From IMG/VR virus record IMGVR_UViG_3300035180_001778, positions 124,001 through 188,000 of that record: a stretch of 64,000 bases of DNA; one strand, given 5' to 3'. The position numbers were made by a program, and so were the translations under genes. Under the pieces are notes generated by a model that did not search any database, was not told the origin of the DNA, and saw nothing but the letters and a program-made list of their open reading frames with translations. Positions 769-60,892 of this stretch are shown here, piece after piece (positions within the stretch are counted from its first letter, which is position 1; every line of letters begins with the position of its first letter).

Positions 769-3700
769 CAGCCGCCTCCTTGCGTTGCCAGGATCTTGTA
801 GAGCTGTTTCACAAGCTCTAGTTGCGTCTTTTGGCGATCGGACACGGCTCGGGCCTTCTTCGGGAGGTAGCCCTTCGTGAGGTTGAGACGAGCATCGAGC
901 CAGGCGTACCTCTTGTCGTAGAGCTTCTCGATGCTCTTGAGGATGTTCTGGATCGTGTTGATGGGGCCCGAGGGGTCCGTCAGCCCCGTGAGTCGAGCGT
1001 CGACCACAGCTCCCCGAGCGAGCACGTCGGAAGGTAGGATGCTGTTGGCGTACATGTTGTGGTCGACGACAGGACCAGGGACAACGACAGAAACCGTTGC
1101 CTGCACGAGCGCGTTGAAAGTGTCGAACCCCGCTGCATAGGCCACCGAGTTCTTGAGGATGGTGAAGAGATCCGAGAAGCTCTTCTTGATCGTCACCCCA
1201 AAAGGCCTCGTGACGCGGAAAGTGACCGCGGCATTGACAGCAAACGCCACATCGACGTTGAGGGTGGTGGTCGTCGGAGGGGGATTCACGACCTTGTAGA
1301 ACCCGTCGTTCCCATTGCCATCCGTCGGGATGTAGACGAGGTCTCCAGCTTGAACCCCGGCTGCAACGAAGTCCGTGGTCCCCGTCAACACCGTGCCCGC
1401 GGCCGTCCCAACCTGGGTTGCAGGGGAAAGGAGGTCGGTCAACACGTATTCGAAGAAGGCCTCGATCGCGACCTTCTCCGAATTGACGGGGGTGATTGCA
1501 GGGAGAGCCGGCGCCACATTGGTGAGAATGAGGGCCTTTGCTGCCGTCAAGGACGACGTGAGATGCGCGAGGTCACTGAAGGTGTTGAGGGCATCGTCGA
1601 TACGATACTGGAGGATGATCCCATCCGTTGTGAAGGGGTGGTCCACAGTCAAGTCATTTGCTGTGAAGGTGACGATCTGCCTTCGATCCCCGACAGAAAC
1701 TCCTGACGCGATCACGACAGTATACCCCGCTCGAACGCCACCTGTGGTGAAGTCTGCGGACGGATCCGTCATGACATTTCCCACGCTGCTCACCAGAATA
1801 CCCCCTGTGGTGGTCCGATTGCTCACCGTGATGGTGAACGGGAAGCCGGCATCCTGGGTGGTGAACGCCGTGTCCACCGTCACCGTGTTGGCTGTGACGG
1901 CTGTGATTCGTCGGTAGCTGGTCGCGCCATTGAGCCCACCCGTGATACGCACGAGGTCATACACCTGGGGGACAGGGCTCGGGAAGTTGACGGCCGCCGT
2001 GATGATGGTCTTGGCGACGTTCAAGCTCCCCGTCCCCACATAGGGCGGCGTGGTGAGGGGGTTCTGAAGGATCCCACCCGCAGAGGGACTCCCCGTCCCC
2101 ACATAGTCTTGCTCGAAGCCGATCAACCCCAGCTCGCTCTCGAACGAAGGACTCACGAGCGGGATCGACTCGTCGCCGTCATCGTCCAGAGCAATACCGT
2201 CCAGAGCCGGGAAGCGCAGAGGCTCCGTCAACGAGTTGCTCAGGGTGATCGCCGCCTGGATCCTCTCATTGGCGTTGGGGGGAGTCGAGGAGAACCCGAA
2301 AAGAGACATGTCGAAGGGATAGAGCAACGTCCCCTTCTCGAAGTTGACGAGGAACTCAATCCCAATCGTGTAAATCTTCCCCACAGGCGTATAGGGAGGA
2401 TTCGGATAGCCAGGCTCCAGGAGGGGTGCCGTGATCGTTGCTCCCGCCGGGATGTCAACCGTGGTCGGGAAACCAACGGTGATCGAATCGGGGCTCGACC
2501 CAATGCTCGTGATCACGATGAGCGGAGGGATCAGGCCGTTCGGCGGAATGTTGACGTGCAGAGGAGTCCCATCTTCTGCAATGATATCAACAGCTTGGCC
2601 GACAACGAACGCGGGCCTCAACAACGTGTCGGTCGCGTTCGGGTCTGTCGTGTAGAACGTCGAGGAGCCAGCTTGAGCCGGCTTGAGGATCCGGGCTCTC
2701 GGGCTCCTTCGCCGAATCTGTTGGATCCCCGTCAGGTTTCTGGCCCCCAAATCCAGGATCTCATCTTGGACCTGAGCGTTCGTGTCCTTCCCCGAGATCG
2801 TGATCCCGAAGGTGTACTTCACGGTGGGGTAGAAGCGACTGAGGGGCCCGGGGTTGAAGACGGGCACCCACGTCCCGGTGAAGGTGAACGGGATGAGCCC
2901 CCCAGACAGGTCGAGGGGAAACGGCGTGAGAAGAACCTGGTCGTCAATCTGGTTCGTCGAGGCCGAGAGAGTCTTGGGAGGCTGAGGCAACGGGCCCGGG
3001 GGAACTTGAGCCAACGGCGGCAATGGCACCAAAGGGTTGTCAAGCTTGCCGTCGAAGATGAAGCGCCCGTCAGCGCAGCCAATGACCCGACCATCAAGAT
3101 CCCGAAGGACGTCCTCCAGGTAGTTGGTCGCGTCGTTGTAGTGCTTGAGCATGACCTGAGCGACGAGGTCTTCGTTGGCGATGTGCCCCTCGGAGAAGAA
3201 GACAGACTCTCGCCCTTGGTCGTAGAGCTTCGACGCGGCCGTGTTCGAGAGGTTGGGACCTCCGGAAGGAGAGGCGGCCTTCGCATCATCTGAGATCGAT
3301 TTCGCCACTTCGATTCGGAAGTTCGTCCTCGTCTCAACCCGGTAGTAGAATGAGTCCGCCGAGTAGATCGAGTAATCCATCTGGAGGCTCTGGTTCACGA
3401 GCCCATTCACCACGTCATCCGGAGCGATGACGGTCGTGTAGGATGCCTGGAGCCGGAGCCCAGCCGGCACGAGACGGTATCCCGTGTAGAGCAGGGTGAT
3501 CTCTTCCCGAGGCTGCAACGGAGGGGAGAAGGTGATCTGCCCCGATTCGTTGAGGGTGTAGTCCACCAATTGCGTGAGAAGGTGCCCCACTTGCCCTTCA
3601 ATGCGACGGTAGACCGAGTAGGGCTGCGTCAACACAGGGGACCGACCCGTCAGGGCCTTCTTTGCAGAAGCCTCCAGGATGGGCCTTGCAGAGACCTTGA

Positions 3701-13051: not shown

Positions 13052-14719
13052 CTACACCGAAGGTGTCCCCAAGGGAAATGACTTCGGGGCACCGTACGTG
13101 AAGTGGGGATCGGTTTGATCGAGGAGATAGGTGGCCCGCACACTGAACGAGAAGCTGTACTCCAGCGTGAACGGGCTCAGGTCGGATTCGGTGACGTTGA
13201 AGGAGTCGAAGGACCCGATGTAGATGATGTTGTCGTAGAAGATGTAGATCGACCCCACAAGGGCGAGATTGGTAGTCTTCTGCGTCTGGGTGGACGTGGC
13301 ATCCGGGAGCCACACGCCCCCGTTGTTGCGGTACAAGAGCCAGAGCGATAGGAAGTTCTGGTAGGAGAGGGAGAAGTTCCGAGCCATGCGAGTGAGCCCG
13401 GGGCTGTTGCCCACGCTCCCAAGGGATCCCCCGTTCGCATCGATCGCGTAGAACCCCGCGAGCTTCCCGGAGCCTTCGACCTTGTCTTGCTGCTCCCCCC
13501 AATGCTCGACGATGGGTCCGTTCCGACCCCAGTTCCCATCGGAGACGACCTTCTCCGAGGAGACCTTGAAGGACGCAGGGTTGACCAACATCCGTAGGGG
13601 AGGCGTGTTGGCCATCTGGTCGATGGCCAGCTTGACTGCTTTGGCAGCGGCTCTCTGCACGTCTTGGAACTTCTGCCCCAAGCCCGACGTATCGAGAGAC
13701 GTGTTCGCAGTCTTCGAGTTCTCCTTGGACGCCACCTGTGCGGAGGCACTACCCGACCCCTGCCACCCCGCAGTGGAGTCCGCGTTGACGGGGTGGGTGT
13801 TTGCATCAATGTCCACCCCTGAGAGCATCTTGTCGAGGTCTACCAAGGCGTACAGATGGAGGCCGTCGCCCCCGACTAGGTCCTTGCCTCCCGCTCGATG
13901 CACCTCCCACGAGCCATCTTCCTGTCGAGTCCACACCCGATCGGATCTGGAGATGCCCCTGTACCCAGCAACATTCTGCCCGCCGCTGATATCCCGTTCT
14001 GTGAAGTACCCAGCTTCGGCAGACCCCGAGGTGATGGTCTCGATGATCGCCATGTGTTGCTGCCCACCCGTGATGTAGAAGATATCCCCGGGTTTGGGGG
14101 TCACTGAGAACTTGCCGAACTTGTCGAGGCGAGCCCCCTTTCGGGCGGCAATCGCCAGGACATCAGCGTTCGCCATGCTCCACTTGTAGGGGTTCGTCAG
14201 CTCCGGCTCATTGAGCCCCAGTTCGCGTAGCCAGCCTCGTACGGTGATCGCACACGAGGCCTGTTCCGAAAGAGCGACTGCCGTTGAAAGAGGATCGATC
14301 GCCGGGTCCGCGAGGAGATTCAGGTAGCGTTCATTTGTCGAGGCATTCGTGCTGAGACCCACATAACTCTGGGCAAGTGCCAGAGCCTTGTCCCGGGCAT
14401 CCTGGTTGAAGCCAGCGTTGGAGCCCCCCGAGGTGCCAGAGCTTGTCCCCGCTGCGGGCGTCCCGAGAATCGACGAAAGAGAGGCCGACCGATCCAGGTT
14501 GCGCCCCGTCACGTTCGCCGAAGGAGGGAGAACCCCGATGATGAAGGGCTTCACATTCTTCGCAGAAAAAGGGATCTGCGAAAGAGGGATGTACTCCGCG
14601 GACAGGTAGTCAGACGTGGTGCTGAGCGAGGAGAAGAACGAGAGCAGGTTGTAGATGTTCGGCGGGTGATAGTCCGCCGTCTGCTCAATCTGCTTCGCGA
14701 TACTGTTCTCGTTTGCCAT
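13052..14719 (-). CDS. Tail tube-initiator-like protein with internal CHAP/NlpC-P60-like domain
   Basis: Likely start MANENS; 'SCAITVRGWL...PKPGDIFYI...HMAIIE' resembles a Cys/His amidase; C-terminus (VNPASF...EHWGEQ...YIGSFDSFNVTESD.SPF) is paralogous to 15321-15968. Confidence 0.6.
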   Translation of the reverse strand: MANENSIAKQIEQTADYHPPNIYNLLSFFSSLSTTSDYLSAEYIPLSQIPFSAKNVKPFIIGVLPPSANVTGRNLDRSASLSSILGTPAAGTSSGTSGGSNAGFNQDARDKALALAQSYVGLSTNASTNERYLNLLADPAIDPLSTAVALSEQASCAITVRGWLRELGLNEPELTNPYKWSMANADVLAIAARKGARLDKFGKFSVTPKPGDIFYITGGQQHMAIIETITSGSAEAGYFTERDISGGQNVAGYRGISRSDRVWTRQEDGSWEVHRAGGKDLVGGDGLHLYALVDLDKMLSGVDIDANTHPVNADSTAGWQGSGSASAQVASKENSKTANTSLDTSGLGQKFQDVQRAAAKAVKLAIDQMANTPPLRMLVNPASFKVSSEKVVSDGNWGRNGPIVEHWGEQQDKVEGSGKLAGFYAIDANGGSLGSVGNSPGLTRMARNFSLSYQNFLSLWLLYRNNGGVWLPDATSTQTQKTTNLALVGSIYIFYDNIIYIGSFDSFNVTESDLSPFTLEYSFSFSVRATYLLDQTDPHFTYGAPKSFPLGTPSV

Positions 14720-16440: not shown

Positions 16441-19400
16441 TCAGCGGTTCTTCTTCGCGCCTTCGTTCTCGTAGAAGGTGTTCGAGGCCTCTGCTCGAAC
16501 CAACCGTTTGAGATCGCCGCGCAGCTCCAGGACGATCTTCTGCGTCCCCGAACCCCCACCCGCGGGGACGATCTTCTCCCCAACCCCAATCGAAGCCAGG
16601 CCTTCCCCCGGAGCGGGGCGAAGTTGAGCCATGCCGTTGGCCACGGCTGAGACAACGCCTCCTGTGGCGTTCGCCGAGAGCTGGGTGATGGCGGTGTCCG
16701 CTGTGATGCCCTGTCCGAGCTTGTCGGCGAGTGCAGCCCCAAGGCCCCGTCCGGAGATGCCCCCCTGGACAGCCTTGCTCACGGATTCCTGCTTCAGATC
16801 CTTGTAGAGGTAGTACTCGTAGAGCCCCTGACGGAGCGCTTCGAGGAACGAGTCCTCCATCTGCTGTCCCATCTTGTTCTTCAAGAAGGCCTTGTCGATG
16901 ACAATGCCCTGCTTGCGCAGCGTGTCCTGAGCCCCATCGAGACCCTTGATCACATGGTCTTGCTGGCCAGCCGTGGGGGCATCCTTCGGCAGCGGGGGAG
17001 CCCCAGGAGCAGCTCCTCCAGCCGCTCCCGGAGGAAGCGGAGGACCTGACACCCCAGGGGGCATAGCTTGAGGGGGTGCCTCTTGCGGGGCCGGACTGTC
17101 AGGGCTACTCGAAGGAGACGTAGAACCACCCGTCATGGCCTTGAGGTCGGGGAATATCTTGGCCAACTTGGTGGGGTCCATCTCCCAGCCGAGCTTGGCC
17201 ATGATCTTGTCCATGTCATCCTTGCTGAATTTGGACGTATCGATCGACCCGTCGAACCCCACGATACCTGCCTTGCCCTTCTTCTGGTTCATGAACTCTT
17301 GACGAGTGCCGGGGTCCAACTTCAGACGGTCTGCCTCCTTGTTGGCTGCATCGAGCTTGTCCTGTCCTCCGTAGAGTCCGCCTTCCCCCAAAGCATCAAT
17401 GACAGCCCGACGCATCTCTTGAGGGCTTGCGTTTTCCTGCATCTTCCGCTGGGCAGCCTGCCCGCTTTGACCTCCCTTGGTCATCGCGTCCACAATCTGC
17501 TTCATCCCCTGCGACTGCATCAGCTCGCCACGGAACTTGAACTCATCCCCACCAGAAGCTCCCAACGCCTTTTGGGTATCGGAATCCTTGCCCTCGCGGA
17601 CGGTTTTCGAGAGGTCCCGCTGCTTCCTCTTCTCGTCGTTGCCGAAGATTTTGGAGTCGACCAAGGCGTCCCAAATTCCGGTCAACACCGTGTAGATTTG
17701 ATTCATGATGAACTCGGCGACGTTGCCGATCTTGTCCATCAAGCTCGTCTGGAACTTGCCGGTCTCCTTGGCGTAATCGATCTGCTTCGCGCCATCCTTG
17801 AGGGCGTCCTGCTCCGACTGATCCAGGGTCGCCAAGATGTCGTCATAGCCCGCCGTGTCGATATCGGCCGCTGCCACTCCGGCCTTGTCGAGGCGCTTCA
17901 TTGCAGCGGCTTGCTTGTCCCCGCCAGCCTTGAGGTCCGCCTTCAGCTCGTCCCGCTGCTCGTCGATGGCCTCCTCGAACTTGGCCATCTGGGCGAGCTG
18001 GTCCTCACTGATCCCGTTCGCATCCGCAAGCATCTCGGTCCCGAGATCCCCACGCCGGTCCCGGAGCTTCCCCGACCCTCCGATGTTGAGCGCAGACTTC
18101 ATCGACTGAAGGGCTGCGCCAGGGCCGAGGTTGCGTCCCGCCACAGAGGATCCGAAGACCCCCTTCTTGTTGGCTTTGGCGTCCATCCGCATCTCGGAGA
18201 TGGCCTCATGAAGCGTCCCCTGAGCTTCCTTGGAGACCCCCTGCATGAGTTCCTTGATGGGCTTCGACATGAGGTCTTCGCGAGAATACCCAGCCTTCCC
18301 GCCGGCTTCCGCGATCTTCCCACTGACGTCCTTGGACTTACGGTCAAGGTCCTTCTCGACCATGCCGCCCATCTTGCCGCCTCCGAGGAGGTTCGTCTTG
18401 AGACGCTCGACGCGACCCATCCCCTTGAGGGCCTGCGTCGCCGTCTGCATGAACTTCTGGGCGTTCCTTGGGCTCATCACCTTGCCCAAGAGGCCGAGGA
18501 TCTTGACGGCGTCTTCCATCCGAGTGTTGTAGAGAGCCAGGTCCGCGGAGACTCCTCGGATGATCCCGAAGAACTTGTTGCTCGCGATCCCTCCGTCCTC
18601 CGCTGCCCTGCTCATCTGCGTGAAGTTCAGCTCGACGCTCTTGAGCCCCATCCCCATGTCCGTCATCATCTCCGCTTGGAGATTGCCGATGTCAGAGAGG
18701 CTCACGCCAAGATTCCGTGAGTAAGCCACTGCCATCTGGACAGTCGAGCCAAAGCTCTTCGCGTAGCCGGCTGCTTCTTTCGATGACTTCGACGTCGCCT
18801 CGAAGTCATCGTTGAGGCGGCGCAAAGAGACACCCTCGGCTGTGAGGGAGCTGAGGACAGCCTTGTGGGTATCCTTGTTGATACCCCACGACATGTTGTC
18901 GAGACTCGTCGCCTGGTCACGGATCTTCTTGAGGGTGTCCCCGAGTTCTCCTGCTCCGGCATTGACGTTGTTGAAGTTCGAGTAGAGGAAAGAAGCGGAT
19001 CCCGACGTGGCTAGGATTTCCTTGTTGAAGTCTTTCGCCGCTGCCTCTGCGTCCACGAAGAGCTTGACGAGACCCACCATGACGGTGCTCACGACGCCGA
19101 GAAGGGGCCCGAGCTTCGAGACGATGTCGAGGATGGGTGCGAGCCCACCGGCCAGCTTCCCGACCCCCTGCATGGCCCCGCCGCCAGCCACCTGAGCCGC
19201 GCCCCCGAGCTTGCCCATGATGCCGCCACGGGCCATGGACATCTTGCCCTTGGACATCATGGATGCGCCAGCTCGCTCGCCAAACTTGCCGCCGACCTTG
19301 GCAAGCCAAGACCCGCCCTTGAAGACGCCCTCGACGCCCTTCCCCAAGAGCTTCCCGCCAGACTCGAAAGCTCCGGGAAGGTCCTTCGAGATAAGGCGAT

Positions 19401-25201: not shown

Positions 25202-25525
25202 CTACACCAAAAGGAGGGACCGACCCCAAGAAGACATGAAGGCCTTGATGTTTTCCCGCCCAATGCAGTTCTCAGAATGGATCTCGAACTCCGGCGGATT
25301 GACGCAGCCGAACTCGTAAAAGAGCCAGTTCAAGAACCGCATCGCGGTATCATCACCCCCAAGATCGTGGTCGAGATCCATGAACATGGGAGGCCCATGC
25401 GCTTCGACCAAGAGACGAGCCTCATCAGATGATGTCGCGCCAAGGAACCCCTCGGGAGTCCACCGAGCCCGAAGATCCGGGTCGGGATCCGCGAGCTGGT
25501 CGTCAAGCCAAAGTCTCCAGGTCAT
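25202..25525 (-). CDS. Cyclic-phosphate-processing receiver-like domain protein
   Basis: LWLDD...R..PEGF...DLDHDLG..D...IHSEN..G pattern. Confidence 0.75.
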   Translation of the reverse strand: MTWRLWLDDQLADPDPDLRARWTPEGFLGATSSDEARLLVEAHGPPMFMDLDHDLGGDDTAMRFLNWLFYEFGCVNPPEFEIHSENCIGRENIKAFMSSWGRSLLLV

Positions 25526-25705: not shown

Positions 25706-25948
25706 TCAGTAGGGGAATTCGCCAAGCTGGTCCAGGATGGACTTTCGGATCACCGCACCATCTTTCCTGGTGACAGGTTCGATCTCCAGCTCGACGATCT
25801 GAAGCTGACGATCACGGTCATCGTAGATCGTCTCCTCGATCGAAGGCTTGTCGTAGAATCGGTCCGAGGTGGCGTCCGGGTCCTTGTGTAAGGGTGCGTA
25901 CATGCGGTCGCAGGTTTCGTCGGTCCCCAAAATATCGTAGATCGGCAT
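25706..25948 (-). CDS. Hypothetical acidic protein
   Basis: ORF with AGGA RBS in the minus-strand run. Confidence 0.6.
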   Translation of the reverse strand: MPIYDILGTDETCDRMYAPLHKDPDATSDRFYDKPSIEETIYDDRDRQLQIVELEIEPVTRKDGAVIRKSILDQLGEFPY

Positions 25949-25983
25949 GGTTGTCCTACAGGGTCCTGGCGAGCCCGATCAAC

Positions 25984-26841
25984 TCAGACGCGCCGGAGAA
26001 GCTCGATCATGTGCGTGACGAGGATCAGCGTACCCTGTTCTGGCCCCCAGAGCCATAGCCCATCCGTGTGCCACTCCGGAAGCTCCCCCATGGCTCTTTC
26101 CATGTCGTTGAAGACGCTGGCGGCCGTGAAGAGGTTGAACTCCAGGTAGGCGCTCTTGCGAGACACCAAGACCTTGCGCCGGCTGTCGGTCTCCTCGCTG
26201 ACGAGAAGCCCCCTCAAGTGCCCCATCCGGAACAGCTCGACCCAACCCCCAAGGAGCTGGTCATGGGTCTCCGCGAGCACGAACCCGTTGGACCCGACGT
26301 CGAGAACCTTCACCTTGGGCCACGACCCGACCACAGGGCCCCCGCCGTCAAGATGGTCCCGAATCCACCCCACGGCGGTGGTGAGCCGCTCCCCCAGCTC
26401 GCGCTTCGAGAGACCCTCTTCGGGGAAGAACGACCGGAGAAGCCGGAAGAAGCGCCCACGCTCGGGTTCGATGTGCCCCAACATCGAAAAGCCCCGCCGA
26501 TGTATGAGGTCCACCGACGCCACCACCCCAGGCATCGCCGGGTGAATCGCCAGGGTCCGATCAAAGAAGAGAGCCATCGCGAAGATGGTGTCGAGGTCGC
26601 GGATTCGGTGCGTAGCGAACAAAAGCGGGAAAGGCCTCCCAAGGATGAGATCCTCGAAGAAGCTCGTCAGGGCGCCAGGGTCCGCTTGTCCGAACCCTGC
26701 CCCATGGTGCTCGTAGACGAAAAGGCCCGGGTCGCCCGCTTGCTCACGACTTGCCCCTGTCTCGAACGCGACAGCATCAGGAACGATGACGGGGAGCGTC
26801 GGATCTACGCGGGCGTTGAAAGTGATTGGTGTAGGCATCAC
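25984..26841 (-). CDS. DHH-like phosphoesterase
   Basis: YEHHG, HRIRDLD and VDLIH metal-binding-like motifs. Confidence 0.5.
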   Translation of the reverse strand: MMPTPITFNARVDPTLPVIVPDAVAFETGASREQAGDPGLFVYEHHGAGFGQADPGALTSFFEDLILGRPFPLLFATHRIRDLDTIFAMALFFDRTLAIHPAMPGVVASVDLIHRRGFSMLGHIEPERGRFFRLLRSFFPEEGLSKRELGERLTTAVGWIRDHLDGGGPVVGSWPKVKVLDVGSNGFVLAETHDQLLGGWVELFRMGHLRGLLVSEETDSRRKVLVSRKSAYLEFNLFTAASVFNDMERAMGELPEWHTDGLWLWGPEQGTLILVTHMIELLRRV

Positions 26842-26864
26842 CTAGATGCCTACACCAATCACTT
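26820..26864. repeat. Perfect 20-bp inverted repeat with 5-nt loop over a start codon
   Basis: AAGTGATTGGTGTAGGCATC-accta-GATGCCTACACCAATCACTT. Confidence 0.95.
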
Positions 26865-27041
26865 CAGGACGAAGGTCTCTCGGATCCAGTAGGAGGGGGG
26901 ATCTCCCATAAGAGCATCCAAAGCGATCATCTCGAACCGCTTTACGATCCAGTTCGCGGCCAGTTCACGCGACGCAAAAGGCCTCACACCGTGGACTTCT
27001 TGGTTACGCTCGACGCTCATGACCGTGTATACGATTCGCAT
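26859..27041 (-). CDS. Small hypothetical protein (60 aa)
   Basis: MRIVYTVMSVERNQEVHGVRPFASRELAANWI... Confidence 0.5.
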   Translation of the reverse strand: MRIVYTVMSVERNQEVHGVRPFASRELAANWIVKRFEMIALDALMGDPPSYWIRETFVLK

Positions 27042-27381
27042 AATCTCTACGTACTCCGCAGTGTCCGTAGTTGAACCCGTACAGGAACGTCGCCCCTGAA
27101 GGGGGCCGGAACTCGAAGTCTGCCTGCCCGCAACACGAGTGCGAAAGCTCGAAGGCAAGACGATCCGCCGGGTTGGACACATCGGCAAACCGGAAGGAAT
27201 CCGAGCACTCGTACGCCTCGTGATCCTCCCAAATCGTGAGGATCTCAGCGTCCACGTAGGCAGCGATATCCTCGTCGTATAGGGTGGGGAGTACCTCCGC
27301 GAGTGCCGTGCGGCCACCCTTGTAGTAAGCGAAGGCCGCGGGGGAGAGGTCCAGGACGAGGAAACGGGGATCGATGCTCAT
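27004..27381 (-). CDS. Hypothetical protein
   Basis: ORF with AGGA RBS; CCG...FLYGFNYGH motif. Confidence 0.6.
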   Translation of the reverse strand: MSIDPRFLVLDLSPAAFAYYKGGRTALAEVLPTLYDEDIAAYVDAEILTIWEDHEAYECSDSFRFADVSNPADRLAFELSHSCCGQADFEFRPPSGATFLYGFNYGHCGVRRDYANRIHGHERRA

Positions 27382-27417
27382 GGGAGTCCTACAGCTAGGA
27401 CCCCCATCCGATCAACC

Positions 27418-27789
27418 TCAGACGCGGCTTTCCCAGTACTCGTCCTTCGACTCGTACAGCTCCATGTAATCCTCGATGCGATCCTTCAGGTTGTCCCGCC
27501 AGTTCTGGGTCCGCTTCACGATAGGCGCCTTGTCGGGCACCATCGGCCGGTCCTTGCCGAAGTTGTAGAACTGGACGCGGATCGCATCCTCCCCTTGGCC
27601 GGCTCCCATCCCCGAGTTGGGATGGATCGAAGTCCAGATCCGGATCCCGATGGTCTTCGCCTCGTTCAGGAAGAGGTTGATGACGACCTCCCCCCGGCTG
27701 GCCCCATGCTGAGGCCTGAGCGCCCGGAAGGCTCGCTTGAGGTACGTCTCCATCTCGGGCAACGTGATCTGCGTGAATTGAGCGGCCAT
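27418..27789 (-). CDS. Conserved phage hypothetical protein
   Basis: IRIWTSI...GEDAIRV...VKRTQNWRDNL; start overlaps the helicase stop. Confidence 0.7.
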   Translation of the reverse strand: MAAQFTQITLPEMETYLKRAFRALRPQHGASRGEVVINLFLNEAKTIGIRIWTSIHPNSGMGAGQGEDAIRVQFYNFGKDRPMVPDKAPIVKRTQNWRDNLKDRIEDYMELYESKDEYWESRV

Positions 27790-30700
27790 CACGCCCTCCG
27801 ATCGTACGAGGTGTCAACCCCGCCGGCTGTCATGAAGTAAGAAGCCATGTCCTCGAAGGGCGGGGGCCCATGATCCCCGAAGTCCCCCTCATCCTCAGCC
27901 GTCTTCGGAGTACCCACTTCCGCGGGCAGAGGAACGTCCTTCTCGACGTTCTCCCCCGGCTTGAGGCCTGCCTCGAAGACGAACCGTGAAGGTGCTTTGG
28001 CACAAACCACGGTGAGGTTCTTCGCGGCCCGGGTGAGAGCGACGTAGGCGAGATTCCGCTCCGCTTCGAGCTTCCTCAGCTCCTCTTCCGGATCCGGCGG
28101 GGGCTCATCCTTCTTGGGCTTCTTCTCGACCGGGAAGATACCCGCCGGCATGCACACGAAGACGTTCGGCCACTCGGCCCCCTTCACGCTGTGGACCGTG
28201 GAAAGGACCATGCACCGCGGACGCTCTTCCCGCTGCTCCGGCGGGAGCTTCTTCTGATCCAGAGCCCACTTCTTGAGGTCGACTCGAAGTGTCTTCGAGG
28301 CATCCGAGTAGCGCTCCAGCTTCTTGATGAAGCCCAGAGCCGTCGTCGGGTCGTGACCCAAGTCGTGGTCCTGCGCGTTCGGCTGTGCGATCTGGTAGAG
28401 GAACTGCACAGCTCCAAGCCCCTTGGCAGGGTTCTCCGGAGCGGGAGGTGCCGAAGGATCCCCAGGCTCTCCCTCCGTCTTGGGGAGCATGAGGTTGCCT
28501 TCGTCATCGACGACAGGCTTGACCGAGTCCGGCTCTTCCTCTTCCTCGGCGTCTTCGCTCCCATCCGAGTAGAGGGACATGTCATTCGAGATATGCTCTC
28601 GAAGAGTGACGGTCTTTCGGGTGTCCTCCCCCGTCCGGTTGTTGCGGTAGCCCGTCGTCGCCTTGACGTCGTCGAGGATGATCTTGAAAACATCCTCGAC
28701 GGGCATCGACGTGTCGTTGATGGTCTTCTTGAGCTTCGCGACCTGAGCCCCCATTTCGAGGAGGGTCTCCGTCATCTCGTCGACAGACTTCCGCCAGAGC
28801 CAATCCCCCGTGGCCATCAGCTTGTTCTTGTACGGCTGCTTGAGGGCTTCGGCGAGCTGGCGAGCGTAAACCCTCTTGGTGATCACCTCGAAGGGGTTGA
28901 GCGACTTCACGTCCATCCCGTCCCCACGAGCGATGTCCTGGAGAGCCTCCTTGACGATCTCGGCCACCTTGTCAGTCGAGAGGTAGAGACCACGATCCGG
29001 CTTCGTCAGGCTCGACGCCAACGAGAGCTGCATCTTCTCGAAGTTGGTCCCGCCCGCGAGGTCGAGGTAGCCAAGCACAGCCTTGGACTCAGGGGCTTCC
29101 AGGAAGCTCGACCCACCCACACGGGTGTACGGGATGCCCTCGATGATACAGGCCGTCTCGTAGTCGTTCAGCTCGTTGTTTGTACGAGCGAGAACAGCGT
29201 AGTCCTTCTCCTCGCTCGTCGGATTCGCACGAAGCTCCTTCGTGATCCGCTGAAGGGTATAGATGGCCCCAGAGGCGTTGTCCCCCGGCACCGTGACCTC
29301 GATCGAAGCTTCCTTGCGAGCCTTCTTCGGGTTCGCGCGAGCCTCCATCGGGATCTGGTTCGTGTTGTGGGCGACGAGCTTGTTGGCGCACTCGACGATC
29401 TCCGGAGCGCAACGGTAGTTCGTCTTGATCATCCGAGTCTTCCAGCCCTCCTTGCCGTTGAGGGCGGTGAAGAGATCCGGGCGAGCCCCGCGGAACTGGT
29501 AGATGGCCTGCTTGTCGTCACCGACCATCCAGAGGGACTTGCCGTCCTTGCCATCCGTGATGTGCTGAGACATCAGGTCGAAGACTTGGTGCTGAACCGT
29601 GTTGAGGTCCTGGCACTCGTCCACGAGGATGTGGTCGAACATGTTCTGAACCAAGGTGCGAGCCTTGGGGTCACGAACGAGGATGTCCCGGTAGACCTTG
29701 ACCATGTCGTCGAGATCCCCGAGTCGCTCCTTGCCCGGACGGAATGTGTCCATCCACTTGTCGGCGGTCTTGCTCTGCGAGCACGGCGGACGCCAGCCCG
29801 GGATGTCCCCCTTGAGACCCGAGCCGATGTGATACCAGATCGCCGCCTTGATCTCCTCTTTCGAGGTGGCATTGGCGAGCGCTTGCTCCGGAGAGACGTC
29901 GTTGCCCTTCCAGACGTTGATGAGCAAGCCAGCCTTCTTGGCGCTGGGAATGTCTTCCAACGCCTTCGGTTGGACCTTGTAGTAGGACGCCAGAGCCACA
30001 GGCCCACATTCCGTCCAGACACCCTTGATGGCCAGCGTGTGGTTGATGGGCTTCGGGCCACGCTTGAACTTCTGCCCCGGCTCCGGGTTGGCGATGAGCC
30101 GCTCCTCAGAGAAGAGCTTCTGCTCCTCTGGAGTACCGAAGGCCGGGATGTTGGACCCTCGATCGCCCACGATGAATCGCATGAAGAGCGAGTGCATCGT
30201 CCCCACGGACATCTGCTTCATCTCGTTCTCGCCGCACTTCTTGGCGATCTTGTCCCGCAGCTCGTTCGCCGCCTTCCGGTTGAACGAGCACGCCAGGATG
30301 CGGCCGGGCTTGACCCCGCGATCCTTGATGAGGTACTGAATTCGAGCGACCAGAGTCGTCGACTTCCCAGCCCCAGCTCCCGCGGCAATGAGAACCTTGC
30401 CGTCCGTGAGAGCTGCTCCCCGTTGCTCCGGGTCGAGGGAACGGAGGGGCTCCGGGACATTCTTCAGGTCTTCGGGGTCTGCCATGGCCGCTGCTACAGT
30501 TGCAGCCGCGATGCCAACAACCTGAGATTTCGTGACGGGAGCATCAGGCTCGTTTTTGGCGTCCAGAGACTTCAAGGCCGTCGCCTGAGCTTCCTCCTGA
30601 ACCCGCGAGATGATCTTGTCCTGGCGGTCTGTGGTGCCCTTCGTCTCCTCGGACGCAGGGTCGGCAGCTTCCGCCTTCATACGCTCGACGGCCAGCTCCT

Positions 30701-31301
30701 TGGACGCGTCGACCCGCCCGCCAGTTTGGCTAACCGCTGTCACAGGTGTCGGAGGAACCCCCGACCCTGCCAATTTGGCAGCCTCGTCGATCCAGTTCCG
30801 GATCCGGATGTTCTTGACGGGGATGACCGCGAACTTGTCGAGGGCGGCATCTGCATCGTCCACCATCGAGGCCGCGATAGCCGCTCGAACCTCTTGGAGG
30901 GCCTTGTTCGTGGAGAACACCGCCCGCATTGTCGAGGCACCACCCCGAGAGAGCAGGGTACGAATCTGGAGAGCCCGGCGAGCGGCCCCGTCCGGGGTCG
31001 GCCTCAGCCGAAGAGCCTTCTCCAGCATCTTCTTGTGGGTGTCCGACGGGAGGTTGGCTTTCATGAAGCCAGCGATGACCTCGCCGTGGAGCATGTCCGC
31101 CATTCGGAGCAGCTTCAGCCCGTTGGCCGTCATCTCGTCATGGGGGAGCCCAACCTCCTCCATGTACCGCATGTAGGTATCGAGGGCGAGAAGGAAGACC
31201 ACGTATTCGGCGATCTGGAGTTCGCCGAACGTCTTGTCGACCTCGACAACCTCTTCATCAGCGGCCTGACGACGGTCGTAGATCATCTGGGTGTCGTGCA
31301 T
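27789..31301 (-). CDS. UvrD/PcrA/Rep-family SF1 helicase with ~285-aa N-terminal extension
   Basis: Walker A AGAGAGKS, VDECQD, VGDDKQAIYQFRGA, NYRC, STVHSVKGAEW, ERNLAYVALTRA. Confidence 0.95.
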   Translation of the reverse strand: MHDTQMIYDRRQAADEEVVEVDKTFGELQIAEYVVFLLALDTYMRYMEEVGLPHDEMTANGLKLLRMADMLHGEVIAGFMKANLPSDTHKKMLEKALRLRPTPDGAARRALQIRTLLSRGGASTMRAVFSTNKALQEVRAAIAASMVDDADAALDKFAVIPVKNIRIRNWIDEAAKLAGSGVPPTPVTAVSQTGGRVDASKELAVERMKAEAADPASEETKGTTDRQDKIISRVQEEAQATALKSLDAKNEPDAPVTKSQVVGIAAATVAAAMADPEDLKNVPEPLRSLDPEQRGAALTDGKVLIAAGAGAGKSTTLVARIQYLIKDRGVKPGRILACSFNRKAANELRDKIAKKCGENEMKQMSVGTMHSLFMRFIVGDRGSNIPAFGTPEEQKLFSEERLIANPEPGQKFKRGPKPINHTLAIKGVWTECGPVALASYYKVQPKALEDIPSAKKAGLLINVWKGNDVSPEQALANATSKEEIKAAIWYHIGSGLKGDIPGWRPPCSQSKTADKWMDTFRPGKERLGDLDDMVKVYRDILVRDPKARTLVQNMFDHILVDECQDLNTVQHQVFDLMSQHITDGKDGKSLWMVGDDKQAIYQFRGARPDLFTALNGKEGWKTRMIKTNYRCAPEIVECANKLVAHNTNQIPMEARANPKKARKEASIEVTVPGDNASGAIYTLQRITKELRANPTSEEKDYAVLARTNNELNDYETACIIEGIPYTRVGGSSFLEAPESKAVLGYLDLAGGTNFEKMQLSLASSLTKPDRGLYLSTDKVAEIVKEALQDIARGDGMDVKSLNPFEVITKRVYARQLAEALKQPYKNKLMATGDWLWRKSVDEMTETLLEMGAQVAKLKKTINDTSMPVEDVFKIILDDVKATTGYRNNRTGEDTRKTVTLREHISNDMSLYSDGSEDAEEEEEPDSVKPVVDDEGNLMLPKTEGEPGDPSAPPAPENPAKGLGAVQFLYQIAQPNAQDHDLGHDPTTALGFIKKLERYSDASKTLRVDLKKWALDQKKLPPEQREERPRCMVLSTVHSVKGAEWPNVFVCMPAGIFPVEKKPKKDEPPPDPEEELRKLEAERNLAYVALTRAAKNLTVVCAKAPSRFVFEAGLKPGENVEKDVPLPAEVGTPKTAEDEGDFGDHGPPPFEDMASYFMTAGGVDTSYDRRA

Positions 31302-36939: not shown

Positions 36940-38187
36940 TTACTGAGTTTTCAGAAGATCAGATTTCTGAAAACTCAGCACTTCTGAAGAGATACGATTT
37001 CTCAAAAAAGATTCGTCGGCGTACGGTTCGTCCTCTCGGACAGAGAAGAGCTGCATCCCCGACGCTTTCGCCAGCTCAACCTTAGCCTTGTCTCGCGCCT
37101 GAAGGGCGTCGAACTCCTCTCGTTCCGTGACGTAAGTGCTCGGGAACAGCCAGTGCTGAACACCATGGAACTCGACGAGGAGCTGATGGCTGGGGAAGTA
37201 GCCGTCGAAGCGGAACCGACGCCCCGTCTTCGGGTTGGTAAAGCGAGGGTCGGACCACTCGACTTCGTAGGACGCCCCACCCAGGATCCGTGAGACCATC
37301 TCCAGGCAGATTGCCTGCTGTATGGCCGTGTGAGAGATGGGCATCCCGTGCTTCTCGCACTCCCTCCGAATCGTCACGAAGGCGTGCCCAAGAGCCGCGA
37401 TGGCCTTCCCCACCGAGACCTTCCCGTTCTTGAGCCGGAAAGGAAGGAGCTGCTCCCTGGTCAAGGAGACCTCAGTTCCGTTCGTCCAGTGTTGCACCTT
37501 TCGAGTTTCAGAAAGAGCGGCACCTCGTTGACGAACCACATCTGAGGTCTCTTTGGTGAGCCCCTTAAAATGGGAAACGAAGTCATCAGGCCGAGCGCCC
37601 ATACGCGCTACTCGGGGATCGGTCTCCTTCGTCAGACCTGCATTCCACCGGCCGGCATTGGCGGACATCTTCGCTCGGGTATCCTGCGAGAGAGCTTGCC
37701 CCTTGAGGTAGGACTTGTCTCGGGTGCCGCACCGTTGAGACATGACCTCCCCCTCGTACGCCATGTCTGGATGCGCGTTCTGAAGATGGCTCACCAGGCT
37801 CTCAGCCCGATACCCACAAATCTGGCAGATGACGTAGTCAAGCCCCTCCTCTTTCAAAGCCCAGAACTCTTCCACGTCCCGACCTCGGCACTCAGGACAT
37901 CGCGTGTCATGCACCGAAGCGGCGAAGGTGTACCCCACCTCCCGCGGAGCATCGCAGGAAGAGCAAAGGATGGTCTTCTTCAGACCCGCCCGCGGCTTGG
38001 TCGCATGAGATTGAGCCGCCGCAGCCTGACGCTTCTCGGTCAGGGCTTCAGCTCGAATGAGGGCTTGGGGGTGTTTGGCTCGGTAGGCATCCGCCGTCAG
38101 CCCATGCTTCTTCAGATGGGTGGCCAGCGTCGATGCCTGAAACCCGCACTCACGGCACTGAACGAAATCACGATTCTCAACAAGCAT
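36940..38187 (-). CDS. Putative homing endonuclease (C2H2 Zn fingers, NUMOD3-like repeats, Vsr/DUF559-like nuclease)
   Basis: CREC..HLKKH, CQIC..HLQNAH, WNAGLTKETD repeats, RFDGYF...VEFHGVQH...D..K. Confidence 0.75.
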   Translation of the reverse strand: MLVENRDFVQCRECGFQASTLATHLKKHGLTADAYRAKHPQALIRAEALTEKRQAAAAQSHATKPRAGLKKTILCSSCDAPREVGYTFAASVHDTRCPECRGRDVEEFWALKEEGLDYVICQICGYRAESLVSHLQNAHPDMAYEGEVMSQRCGTRDKSYLKGQALSQDTRAKMSANAGRWNAGLTKETDPRVARMGARPDDFVSHFKGLTKETSDVVRQRGAALSETRKVQHWTNGTEVSLTREQLLPFRLKNGKVSVGKAIAALGHAFVTIRRECEKHGMPISHTAIQQAICLEMVSRILGGASYEVEWSDPRFTNPKTGRRFRFDGYFPSHQLLVEFHGVQHWLFPSTYVTEREEFDALQARDKAKVELAKASGMQLFSVREDEPYADESFLRNRISSEVLSFQKSDLLKTQ

Positions 38188-60195: not shown

Positions 60196-60256
60196 GGTGC
60201 TCCTACCCCTTCAAAATGGGATCGTCGATCTGAAGTCATAAAAGGAAGCTCGAACG

Positions 60257-60892
60257 CTAACGCGGGAAAGCCGCGGTACAGACGATGGAGAAAGGCACAG
60301 ACCCCCCGCCACCTCGAACCCACAAGCTCCCCTGTGTTGAATTCAAGCCGAATTGCGAAACAGCGTTGGGCAGCACCTTCGATTCTGCTCCGTCCTGTTC
60401 CATAGACACGAACAGAGAGTTGGCCGCATCCTGGTTGTGGACCCTGAAGTCCTGCATCAGCCGAGGGAAGTCGATCTGTAGGGACCCCGTGCTGTCCGAC
60501 GCATTGGGGGCTGTACCCTGAATCGTAACCGCCCCAATCCCATGTTGAGCCGTATCCGCCAGGATGAGTCCAGCGGCCGAGACCTGGACTTCGCTACCCC
60601 CAAAAGGGACCCGCCAGAGCTGGAGCCAGAAGGACTTCCCGTCGGGGATGCTGTAGGTCGTCGGATTGAAGACGATCCTGACTTGCCGTCCCGAGGTCGG
60701 CTGAGCACCCACAACGGCGATGTTGATCGCCGGGTCAAGGAAGCCGACGTTCGTCGAGTCCAAGAACGTGGTGAAGGACCCATCGAAGTTCGCCGCCCAC
60801 TTGAGACGGTAGGTCTGGGTCCCATCGACCAAGGGAGTGACCAGATCGACGATAGGGGCTCGCCGCCTGATGACTGAAAACGTTCTGTTCAT
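60257..60892 (-). CDS. Beta-rich virion protein
   Basis: ORF coupled to the upstream zinc-ribbon gene. Confidence 0.65.
   Translation of the reverse strand: MNRTFSVIRRRAPIVDLVTPLVDGTQTYRLKWAANFDGSFTTFLDSTNVGFLDPAINIAVVGAQPTSGRQVRIVFNPTTYSIPDGKSFWLQLWRVPFGGSEVQVSAAGLILADTAQHGIGAVTIQGTAPNASDSTGSLQIDFPRLMQDFRVHNQDAANSLFVSMEQDGAESKVLPNAVSQFGLNSTQGSLWVRGGGGSVPFSIVCTAAFPR

What the first reader, a model, noticed from the sequence alone, without database searches (positions are those of the whole stretch)
26820..26864. 20-bp perfect hairpin whose arm is the gene's own first codons
Seen: codons M-P-T-P-I-T of the DHH-like gene are the exact reverse complement of the upstream sequence, which contains GGTGTA; the GTG/ATG start sits at the loop. 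Read-through transcripts would bury the start, whereas a leaderless transcript from the internal motif lacks the 5' arm. Known: T4 uses such hairpins to silence genes on early read-through RNA. The mirror GGTGTA (26828-26833, plus strand) might also fire antisense.
Basis: partly seen in the sequence, partly recalled or inferred. Interest (0 to 1): 0.6.

Follow-up and report, generated by a model that had tools for sequence, protein, structure and literature searches.

The report
Recently born hairpin over gene start
A perfect 20-base-pair hairpin joining a phage promoter motif to the first codons of the next gene is real. It arose recently by a replication copying slip and is missing from the closest relative, so it is at most a young, untested version of the phage T4 "translate only from my own promoter" switch.

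Summary
Window 26820-26839 and 26845-26864 form a perfect 20-bp inverted repeat with a 5-nt loop (21 bp with one G·U; -37 kcal/mol as RNA, z = -11).

The genes lie on the minus strand. In RNA sense:
- The 5' arm holds the TGA stop of a small upstream ORF and the hexamer GGTGTA.
- The loop/3' arm junction holds GTG and ATG.
- The 3' arm is codons 1-7 of a 285-aa protein with a DHH/DHHA1-like fold.

GGTGTA is a genuine signal. It is the most enriched hexamer upstream of genes in this 350-kb phage record. It sits at a fixed N9-N11 (mode N10) before start codons at 84 sites and is 98% conserved in an 89%-identical relative. It also precedes one tRNA gene at the same spacing. A promoter giving (near-)leaderless RNA is therefore likely, with the start falling in the loop.

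The long stem is not conserved. The relative keeps the promoter arm but has different first codons and only a weak quasi-palindrome. Four outgroups have no such structure. The protein N-terminus here is uniquely lengthened. This is the signature of a template-switch mutation, one of about 37 perfect hairpins in the genome that turn over quickly.

T4-like gating is physically plausible but untested. No read data could be obtained.

The parts
26845..26864 (-). 5' arm of the RNA hairpin (right arm of the DNA palindrome). It contains the stop codon of the upstream ORF, the GGTGTA motif and 6 nt of the promoter-to-start spacer.
26840..26844 (-). 5-nt loop (UAGGU in RNA sense). The transcript start predicted from the N9/N10 rule (26841-26840) falls here.
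   Evidence: spacing rule; the start site is inferred, not mapped
26820..26839 (-). 3' arm: last base of GTG, then ATG and codons P-T-P-I-T of the 285-aa gene. Its inner 14 nt are the exact reverse complement of the promoter segment that the relative G001 also carries.
26851..26856 (-). Class-1 promoter-like hexamer GGTGTA (preceded by TT), N9 before GTG 26841 and N12 before ATG 26838.
26836..26841 (-). Candidate start codons GTG (26841-26839) and ATG (26838-26836).
   Evidence: an outgroup uses GTG at N9
25984..26841 (-). 285-aa gene with a DHH/DHHA1-like fold. There is no Pfam or PHROG hit; 187 homologues were found, some on contigs of several hundred kb.
26859..27020 (-). Probable 53-aa ORF whose TGA stop (26861-26859) lies in the 5' arm. 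It is absent at this position in G001. The 152-aa ORF 26859-27317 in the same frame is probably an over-call.
27004..27381 (-). 125-aa gene upstream, orthologous to the gene that directly precedes the promoter in G001.
27390..27415 (-). Class-2 (sigma70-like) promoter motif TTGATC-N16-TGTA, with ATG 27381 eight nt further on. It is the likely source of read-through RNA that would contain the full hairpin.
   Evidence: no T-run terminator lies between it and the hairpin
26828..26833 (+). Mirror copy of TT-GGTGTA created by the palindrome, N12 before ATG 26846.
   Evidence: activity untested
26846..26911 (+). 21-codon mini-ORF behind the mirror motif, antisense to the 53-aa ORF.
   Evidence: read; purely mechanical
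25957..25982 (-). Next class-2 promoter motif, directly after the stop of the 285-aa gene, driving the ORF that starts at 25948.

Best explanation
The hairpin is a young product of a template-switch (quasi-palindrome correction) mutation. In the lineage of this phage, replication copied the reverse complement of the conserved promoter segment (TT-GGTGTA plus 6 nt of spacer) over the first codons of the downstream gene. This lengthened the protein N-terminus and turned a weak ancestral quasi-palindrome into a perfect 20-bp stem.

GGTGTA is most likely a -10-like promoter element whose transcripts begin at or within a few nt of the start codon (leaderless type). Transcripts from the gene's own promoter would therefore begin in the loop, lack the 5' arm and be translatable. 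RNA reading through from the upstream sigma70-like promoter would lock GTG/ATG into a -37 kcal/mol stem.

So it should work like the T4 gene e / I-TevI promoter-in-hairpin gate. It is a recent, lineage-specific acquisition whose adaptive value is unproven.

Shown: the anatomy; the motif statistics and conservation; the derived state; the mutation signature; and the genome-wide hairpin load and turnover.
Inferred: the promoter function and start site; the existence of read-through RNA; and the translational effect.
For: Anatomy and stability.

Motif:
- It is the most enriched upstream hexamer (59 of 378 genes, 6.2x).
- Of 210 genomic copies, 51 have ATG at exactly N10, 14 at N9 and 12 at N11.
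- There are 84 sites with ORFs of 50 codons or more.
- There is no conserved -35 element or SD, and C precedes the ATG in 33 of 51, as expected for a -1/+1 pyrimidine-purine start.
- 39 of 41 orthologous motifs are exact in G001: 98% identity against 83% upstream and 86% in the spacer.
- The same motif at N9-N10 precedes the orthologous gene in relatives down to 44% protein identity, once directly after a hairpin-plus-T-run terminator.
- One tRNA gene begins exactly at N10+1.
- A second motif class with textbook sigma70 geometry (TTGATC-N16-TGTAGG-N6-ATG, 71 sites) also points to leaderless starts.

Derived state:
- G001 shares the 14-nt promoter arm. In the coding arm it differs by 4 substitutions and a 3-nt indel within 20 nt, while the next ~100 nt differ at about 4%.
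- Every G000 state is the complement of the shared arm.
- Family N-termini are M + 4 residues before the conserved F-N. G001 fits this; G000 is 1-2 residues longer.
- G001 and the outgroups fold no better than shuffles.

Genome-wide process:
- There are 37 (G000) and 32 (G001) perfect stems of 13 bp or more, against 0 in simulations.
- Of 42 with an orthologous region in the other genome, 15 keep a perfect stem of 10 bp or more and 26 have 7 bp or less.
- Arms of the lineage-specific hairpins differ at 30% of positions, against about 11% genome-wide.

Same architecture elsewhere: G000 17457-17495 and three 12-bp cases span a class-1 motif and its start.
Against: - No transcript 5' ends, RNA or read data could be obtained, so the promoter function and start site rest on sequence statistics alone.
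- No phage RNA polymerase or sigma factor was detected in the 73%-complete record.
- Here the spacing is N9 to GTG and N12 to ATG, not the modal N10-ATG.
- The stem is not conserved, so selection for gating is not shown. Most class-1 sites have no start-centred hairpin: only 6 of 84 have a stem of 6 bp or more, against about 2.5% background, p about 0.02.
- The outer 6 bp of the stem pair with sequence specific to G000 (the end of the 53-aa ORF). One simple switch does not explain this; it needs chance complementarity or a second event.
- The hairpin itself may stop or process upstream RNA, in which case little read-through RNA would exist to be gated.
Confidence: 0.6

Rival explanations
1. 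Neutral or slightly deleterious mutational scar. The template switch happened and was tolerated because the N-terminus is permissive. It has no regulatory role, since the gene is expressed only from its own promoter anyway.
For: The stem is absent in G001 and all outgroups. The genome carries dozens of such hairpins, many inside coding DNA and lineage-specific. On read-through RNA the gene would in any case have no spaced SD.
Against: Perfect hairpins of 10 bp or more are 5-fold enriched near class-1 motifs (12 of 84 sites against 2.2 expected), and five span motif to start. The variant is fixed in two independent records. Physically, a -37 kcal/mol stem must affect any RNA that contains both arms.
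Confidence: 0.2
2. Translational coupling device. Ribosomes terminating at the TGA inside the 5' arm melt the stem, so the 285-aa gene is translated on polycistronic RNA only when the small upstream ORF is translated.
For: The TGA stop at 26861-26859 is stem positions 4-6 and lies 15 nt before the GTG. The frame of the 53-aa ORF has coding-like GC3 and a weak homologue in G001.
Against: A terminating ribosome would open only the outer ~12-14 pairs. The inner 6-7 bp that cover the start would remain. There is no usable SD for re-initiation. The conserved promoter motif at canonical spacing argues that the gene has its own transcript. The arrangement is absent in G001.
Confidence: 0.1
3. Transcript-boundary element: a terminator, RNase III-type processing site or 3'-end protecting stem for the upstream operon, fused to the next promoter.
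For: Conserved long hairpins sit just upstream of other class-1 promoters: G000 86046 (with a compensatory change), 16620 and 309855. An outgroup has a terminator directly before the motif. A perfect helix of 20-21 bp is long enough to be a double-strand RNase substrate (general knowledge).
Against: There is no T-run after the stem and the terminator scan does not flag it. It is not conserved in G001. The stem overlaps the next gene's codons, which the conserved boundary hairpins do not.
Confidence: 0.1
4. DNA-level element: a palindromic operator for a dimeric regulator, or a cruciform that modulates the promoter.
For: The palindrome is centred on the promoter-to-start region. Perfect inverted repeats with short loops can extrude as cruciforms (general knowledge).
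Against: The half-site occurs nowhere else in the window or the record. 20-bp arms are far longer than operator half-sites. It is not conserved in relatives that keep the promoter and the gene.
Confidence: 0.04
5. Assembly or sequencing artefact.
For: Read support could not be examined.
Against: The sequence is identical in a second IMG/VR record of different length and orientation. The reading frame is intact through the arm. Comparable hairpins are shared with G001, one of them with a compensatory change.
Confidence: 0.02

Closest known systems
Phage T4 promoter-in-hairpin translational masking (gene e lysozyme, I-TevI; reviewed in PMC3014915, section 29)
   Same: A stem-loop sequesters the translation start on long transcripts. 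A promoter of another class lies in the DNA that encodes the 5' strand, so its transcripts lack that strand and are translated.
   Different: Here the promoter motif is GGTGTA, not TATAAATA. The mRNA would be (near-)leaderless, so no SD is involved. The 3' strand is the coding sequence itself. The stem is perfect and 20 bp long. It is not conserved in the nearest relative, whereas the T4 gene e structures recur in related phages. Nothing has been measured.
Quasi-palindrome-associated template-switch mutations (PMC8794818; PMC7202029; PMC8604942)
   Same: A clustered multi-nucleotide change turns an imperfect inverted repeat into a perfect one by copying the opposite arm. It can create long perfect stems in one step and rewrite coding sequence. 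Spacer inversion was also seen here, at G000 16620.
   Different: Here the donor is a promoter and the recipient is the first codons of a gene, so a promoter copy is also created in antisense orientation. The load of such hairpins (about 1 per 10 kb) and their turnover between phages 89% identical seem high, but no baseline was measured.
Leaderless-mRNA promoters of bacteria such as Deinococcus and mycobacteria (PMC4007540; PMC4633059)
   Same: A -10-like element lies at a fixed short distance from ATG/GTG, and no SD is present.
   Different: The element is GGTGTA without a -35 (class 1), or TTGATC-N16-TGTAGG (class 2). Start sites are unmapped. In the jumbo phage phiKZ no leaderless transcript was detected (PMC8244752).
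Intrinsic (rho-independent) terminator
   Same: A stable stem immediately after a stop codon.
   Different: No U-tract, and the stem overlaps the next gene's start.

Membership tests
T4-type promoter-in-hairpin translational gate | A stable RNA stem-loop that sequesters the start codon/TIR on long transcripts | tested here: met
   In silico only: -37 kcal/mol, z = -11. The ATG is in the stem and the GTG is at the loop junction.
T4-type promoter-in-hairpin translational gate | A promoter within the DNA encoding the 5' strand, so that its transcripts lack that strand | tested here: inconclusive
   A conserved, position-fixed GGTGTA lies in the 5' arm, and the predicted start is in the loop. No start-site data are available.
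T4-type promoter-in-hairpin translational gate | Upstream promoter of another class giving read-through transcripts | tested here: inconclusive
   A class-2 sigma70-like motif lies at 27415-27390, and no T-run terminator lies before the hairpin. Transcripts were not observed.
T4-type promoter-in-hairpin translational gate | Lower translation from long than from short transcripts | not testable with these tools
   Needs reporter fusions or toeprinting.
T4-type promoter-in-hairpin translational gate | The structure recurs in related phages | tested here: not met
   G001 has an imperfect quasi-palindrome (z = -1.25). L036, L037 and L038 show no significant structure.
Template-switch (quasi-palindrome) mutation | Clustered multi-nucleotide change in otherwise conserved sequence | tested here: met
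   4 substitutions and a 3-nt indel within 20 nt, against about 4% divergence in the next 100 nt.
Template-switch (quasi-palindrome) mutation | The new sequence is the reverse complement of a nearby donor that both lineages carry | tested here: met
   The inner 14 nt of the coding arm are the reverse complement of the promoter segment, which is identical in G000 and G001.
Template-switch (quasi-palindrome) mutation | The ancestral state is an imperfect inverted repeat at the same place, with polarity fixed by outgroups | tested here: met
   G001 has a 7+5+4-bp quasi-palindrome. The N-terminal length of 19 homologues matches G001, not G000.
Leaderless-type promoter (class 1, GGTGTA) | Fixed spacing to start codons, sequence conservation, and action independent of translation | tested here: met
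   Spacing mode N10. 39 of 41 motifs conserved. One tRNA gene begins at N10+1. This is statistical evidence only.
Leaderless-type promoter (class 1, GGTGTA) | Mapped transcript 5' end at or next to the start codon | not testable with these tools
Intrinsic terminator | GC-rich stem followed by a U-tract | tested here: not met
   Only 3 U follow the stem, and the scan does not flag it.
Palindromic operator | Half-site shared with other regulated sites and conserved with the gene | tested here: not met
   The sequence is unique and absent in relatives.
DHH/DHHA1 phosphoesterase (the gene product) | Match to the Pfam DHH/DHHA1 sequence models | tested here: not met
   No Pfam or PHROG hit. A PDB profile search found nothing relevant.
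DHH/DHHA1 phosphoesterase (the gene product) | Two-domain DHH + DHHA1 fold | tested here: met
   AF2 model with pLDDT 96. VIA Z 9-11 to PAP phosphatase, RecJ, NrnA and GdpP. Residues 175-285 match DHHA1 at rmsd about 2.8 A over about 100 residues. Activity unknown.

The most novel reading that the evidence does not exclude
In this clade of uncultivated jumbo phages, template switching is unusually active. It acts as a routine generator of regulatory structure: it creates start-masking hairpins at leaderless promoters in one step and, by mirroring promoter segments, seeds antisense or divergent promoters. Several divergent promoter pairs in the genome are already arranged as inverted repeats. 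The finding would then be a freshly made example caught before decay or refinement.
Probability: 0.25. Interest if true: 0.65.

Novelty: new member of a known kind. Interest (0 to 1): 0.42.

Why it matters
If the gate works, this is a natural example of how a T4-style "own-promoter-only" translational switch can arise in a single mutational event. The price is rewriting a few N-terminal codons, and a mirror promoter comes as a by-product.

The work also defines two promoter-like motif classes at fixed distance from start codons in a large uncultivated phage. These improve start-codon calls and operon maps for it and its relatives.

It also shows a high load and fast turnover of long perfect hairpins, which bears on how RNA structure originates. 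For annotation it is a caution: a striking perfect hairpin need not be an old, selected element.

Tried and rejected
No other route was tried, so assembly support rests on the identical second record.
- Megablast of the locus against the phage collection found no match.
- Searches of the record for RNA polymerase Rpb2, T7-like polymerase and sigma70 region 2 were all negative. The record is 73% complete, the T7-like polymerase search matched none of the control genomes either, and divergent phage factors would be missed.
- Duplex energy between the 30 nt before and 33 nt after each start did not separate class-1 sites from random positions in this GC-rich genome. A stricter start-centred stem count gave only a weak excess.
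- A test for arm asymmetry in the lineage-specific hairpins was not significant (p = 0.08).
- A full-text search of the paper library for GGTGTA with 'phage' and 'promoter' turned up no paper that appears to deal with it as a phage promoter.
- The operator, terminator and artefact readings were considered and rated low (see rivals).
- The metagenome scan gave one distant locus only.
- The exact number of switch events cannot be resolved with one close relative, because the outer 6 bp involve G000-specific sequence.

Full report
**Observation.**
The window holds a perfect 20-nt inverted repeat, 26820-26839 / 26845-26864, with a 5-nt spacer. All credible genes in the window run on the minus strand, so the RNA sense is the reverse complement.

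In that sense the 5' arm (26864->26845) carries:
- the TGA stop of the upstream ORF (26861-26859);
- TT-GGTGTA (hexamer 26856-26851);
- six spacer bases.

The loop is 26844-26840. The 3' arm (26839->26820) begins with the last G of an in-frame GTG (26841-26839) and continues with ATG (26838-26836) and codons P-T-P-I-T.

One extra G·U pair gives 21 pairs. The isolated hairpin folds at -37 kcal/mol (z = -11) and dominates longer folds. The arm is unique in the window and in the whole record. Order-3 Markov simulations of the genome produce no perfect stem of 13 bp or more.

**Source and relatives.**
The window is positions 124001-188000 of a 350,469-bp IMG/VR virus record (G000, about 73% complete, 60% GC).

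- G002 (234,659 bp) is 100% identical over 234,608 bp in the opposite orientation. It is an independent assembly and contains the hairpin.
- G001 (275,300 bp) is syntenic at about 89% nucleotide identity.

**The GGTGTA motif is real.**
- It is the most enriched hexamer in the 80 nt before ORFs (59 of 378, 6.2-fold).
- Of 210 copies on both strands, 51 have ATG exactly 10 nt downstream, 14 at 9 nt and 12 at 11 nt.
- 84 sites precede ORFs of 50 codons or more.
- The logo is T-Y-GGTGTA-N9-C-ATG. Nothing is conserved further upstream and there is no Shine-Dalgarno in the spacer. Genes without the motif show a modest SD peak at -13 to -8.
- In 41 orthologous sites of G001 the hexamer is exact in 39: 98% identity, against 83% upstream and 86% in the spacer.
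- The orthologous gene carries the motif at N9-N10 in three outgroups: L037 at 70%, L038 at 69% and L036 at 44% protein identity. In L036 it follows a hairpin-plus-T-run terminator.
- One tRNA-Ile gene begins exactly at N10+1 after a GGTGTA. This argues that the signal acts in transcription, not translation.

A second motif class, GGTTGATC-N16-yTGTAGG-N5/6-ATG, has textbook sigma70 spacing: 71 sites, with a spacer of 16 in 70 of them. It would place +1 on the A of ATG.

I therefore read GGTGTA as a -10-like element of a promoter class without a -35 that yields leaderless or nearly leaderless mRNA. This is inference, because no start site was mapped and no phage polymerase or sigma factor was detected.

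Class-1 genes include an NAD-dependent ligase, an SNF2 helicase, a ClpX-like ATPase, other AAA ATPases and a DNA methylase. This suggests a DNA-metabolism regulon rather than late structural genes.

**Local transcription context.**
GC3 profiles show that the 152-aa ORF 26859-27317 is probably an over-call. The real units appear to be:
- a 125-aa gene (27381->27004) behind a class-2 promoter (TTGATC at 27415-27410);
- a 53-aa ORF (27020->26859) that ends in the 5' arm.

No T-run terminator lies before the hairpin. RNA from the class-2 promoter should therefore run into the hairpin, where GTG/ATG are paired.

RNA starting at the position predicted from the spacing rule (26841-26840, in the loop) lacks the entire 5' arm. 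It folds at -9.6 kcal/mol, like shuffled sequence.

This is the logic of T4 gene e and I-TevI (PMC3014915, section 29).

**The long stem is not conserved.**
G001 has the identical 14-nt promoter arm. Its coding arm differs by four substitutions and a 3-nt indel within 20 nt, while the following ~100 nt differ at about 4%. Every G000 state is the Watson-Crick complement of the shared promoter arm.

G001 folds into a 7+5+4-bp quasi-palindrome (-15 kcal/mol, z = -1.25). Outgroups L036-L038 show no significant structure.

Nineteen homologues begin M + four residues before a conserved F-N. G001 (MSLITFN) fits this pattern. G000 (M-MPTPITFN) is one or two residues longer. The G000 state is therefore derived.

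Four features define a template-switch (quasi-palindrome correction) mutation (PMC8794818; PMC7202029; PMC8604942), and all are present:
- a clustered change;
- an exact reverse-complement donor nearby;
- an imperfect ancestral repeat at the same place;
- polarity fixed by outgroups.

The outer six pairs involve the end of the 53-aa ORF, which G001 lacks at this place. Chance complementarity or a second event is needed there.

**A genome-wide class.**
G000 has 37 perfect stems of 13 bp or more (8 of 20 bp or more). G001 has 32 (9 of 20 bp or more). Simulations give none.

Of 42 hairpins with an orthologous region in the other genome, 15 keep a perfect stem of 10 bp or more and 26 have 7 bp or less. 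The lineage-specific arms differ at 30% of positions, against about 11% genome-wide; some of these regions align poorly.

Several lie inside long ORFs, where the relative has a quasi-palindrome, for example G000 2994, 59732, 60254 and 198324.

Some intergenic ones are conserved:
- a T-run terminator at 2425;
- a 22-bp stem at 86046 with a compensatory C:G to T:A change;
- a 20-bp stem at 16620 whose loop is inverted between the genomes.

Perfect hairpins of 10 bp or more are enriched near class-1 motifs: 12 of 84 sites, against 2.2 expected. Five span motif to start: the finding, G000 17457-17495 (17 bp, ATG at the top of the 5' arm) and three 12-bp cases. However, most class-1 sites have no such stem.

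**The gene.**
The 285-aa product has no Pfam or PHROG match and 187 homologues, some on contigs of several hundred kb. A confident model (pLDDT 96) matches DHH/DHHA1 proteins at Z 9-11. "DHH-like" is therefore acceptable as a fold statement.

**Verdict.**
The promoter idea is well supported statistically and comparatively.

The T4-like gate is the most likely consequence. It is unmeasured and, given its absence in relatives, is best seen as a recent by-product of template switching that may or may not be under selection.

The mirror motif on the plus strand (26828-26833, N12 before a 21-codon ORF) duplicates every conserved position of the motif, so antisense initiation cannot be excluded. It was not tested.

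Noticed in passing
window 27390-27415 (-), 25957-25982 (-); 71 sites in G000: A second promoter-like class, GGTTGATC-N16-yTGTAGG-N5/6-ATG. It has sigma70-like spacing (spacer 16 in 70 of 71) and would give leaderless mRNAs. It mostly precedes small ORFs in the 0-100 kb and 265-350 kb parts of the record.
   Followed up: partly
window 26859-27381 (-): The 152-aa ORF is probably an over-call. GC3 supports a 125-aa gene (27381->27004) plus a 53-aa ORF (27020->26859). G001 lacks the ~150 nt holding the 53-aa ORF at this place, but has a weak (37% identity) match to it upstream of the 125-aa orthologue.
   Followed up: partly
G000 251292-251366 (-), outside the window: A tRNA-Ile gene starts exactly 10 nt after a GGTGTA. 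The record carries about 39 tRNA genes at 242-266 kb, plus a predicted tRNA with anticodon tca at 302161-302233 that is preceded by both motif classes.
   Followed up: partly
G000 16620-16667 and its G001 orthologue: A conserved 20-bp perfect hairpin between divergent genes. Its 8-nt loop, which resembles the class-2 -35 element, is inverted between the two phages.
   Followed up: no
G000 86046-86096: A 22-bp perfect hairpin (24 bp in G001) conserved with a compensatory C:G to T:A change and a different loop. It lies 39 nt upstream of a class-1 promoter and has no T-run. It may be a boundary or processing element.
   Followed up: no
G000 13192-13224 and 291264-291307: Perfect hairpins whose two arms each carry GTTGATCC. 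They are back-to-back divergent class-2 promoters arranged as an inverted repeat.
   Followed up: partly
G000 198324-198371, 2994-3032, 60254-60292 and others: Long perfect hairpins (18-21 bp) inside ORFs, where G001 has only a quasi-palindrome. They show the same clustered-change pattern as the finding.
   Followed up: partly
window 36943-36978: A 14-bp perfect hairpin in the last codons of the 415-aa ORF 36940-38187 (-), followed by T-rich sequence. It looks like a terminator. G001 has no orthologous region.
   Followed up: no
window 25202-25525 (-) and 27789-31301 (-): Neighbours of the DHH-like gene: a 107-aa cREC_REC (cyclic-phosphate processing receiver) domain protein and a 1170-aa UvrD-like helicase. 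In several outgroups a divergent protein-kinase gene flanks the DHH-like gene and carries its own GGTGTA at N13.
   Followed up: no
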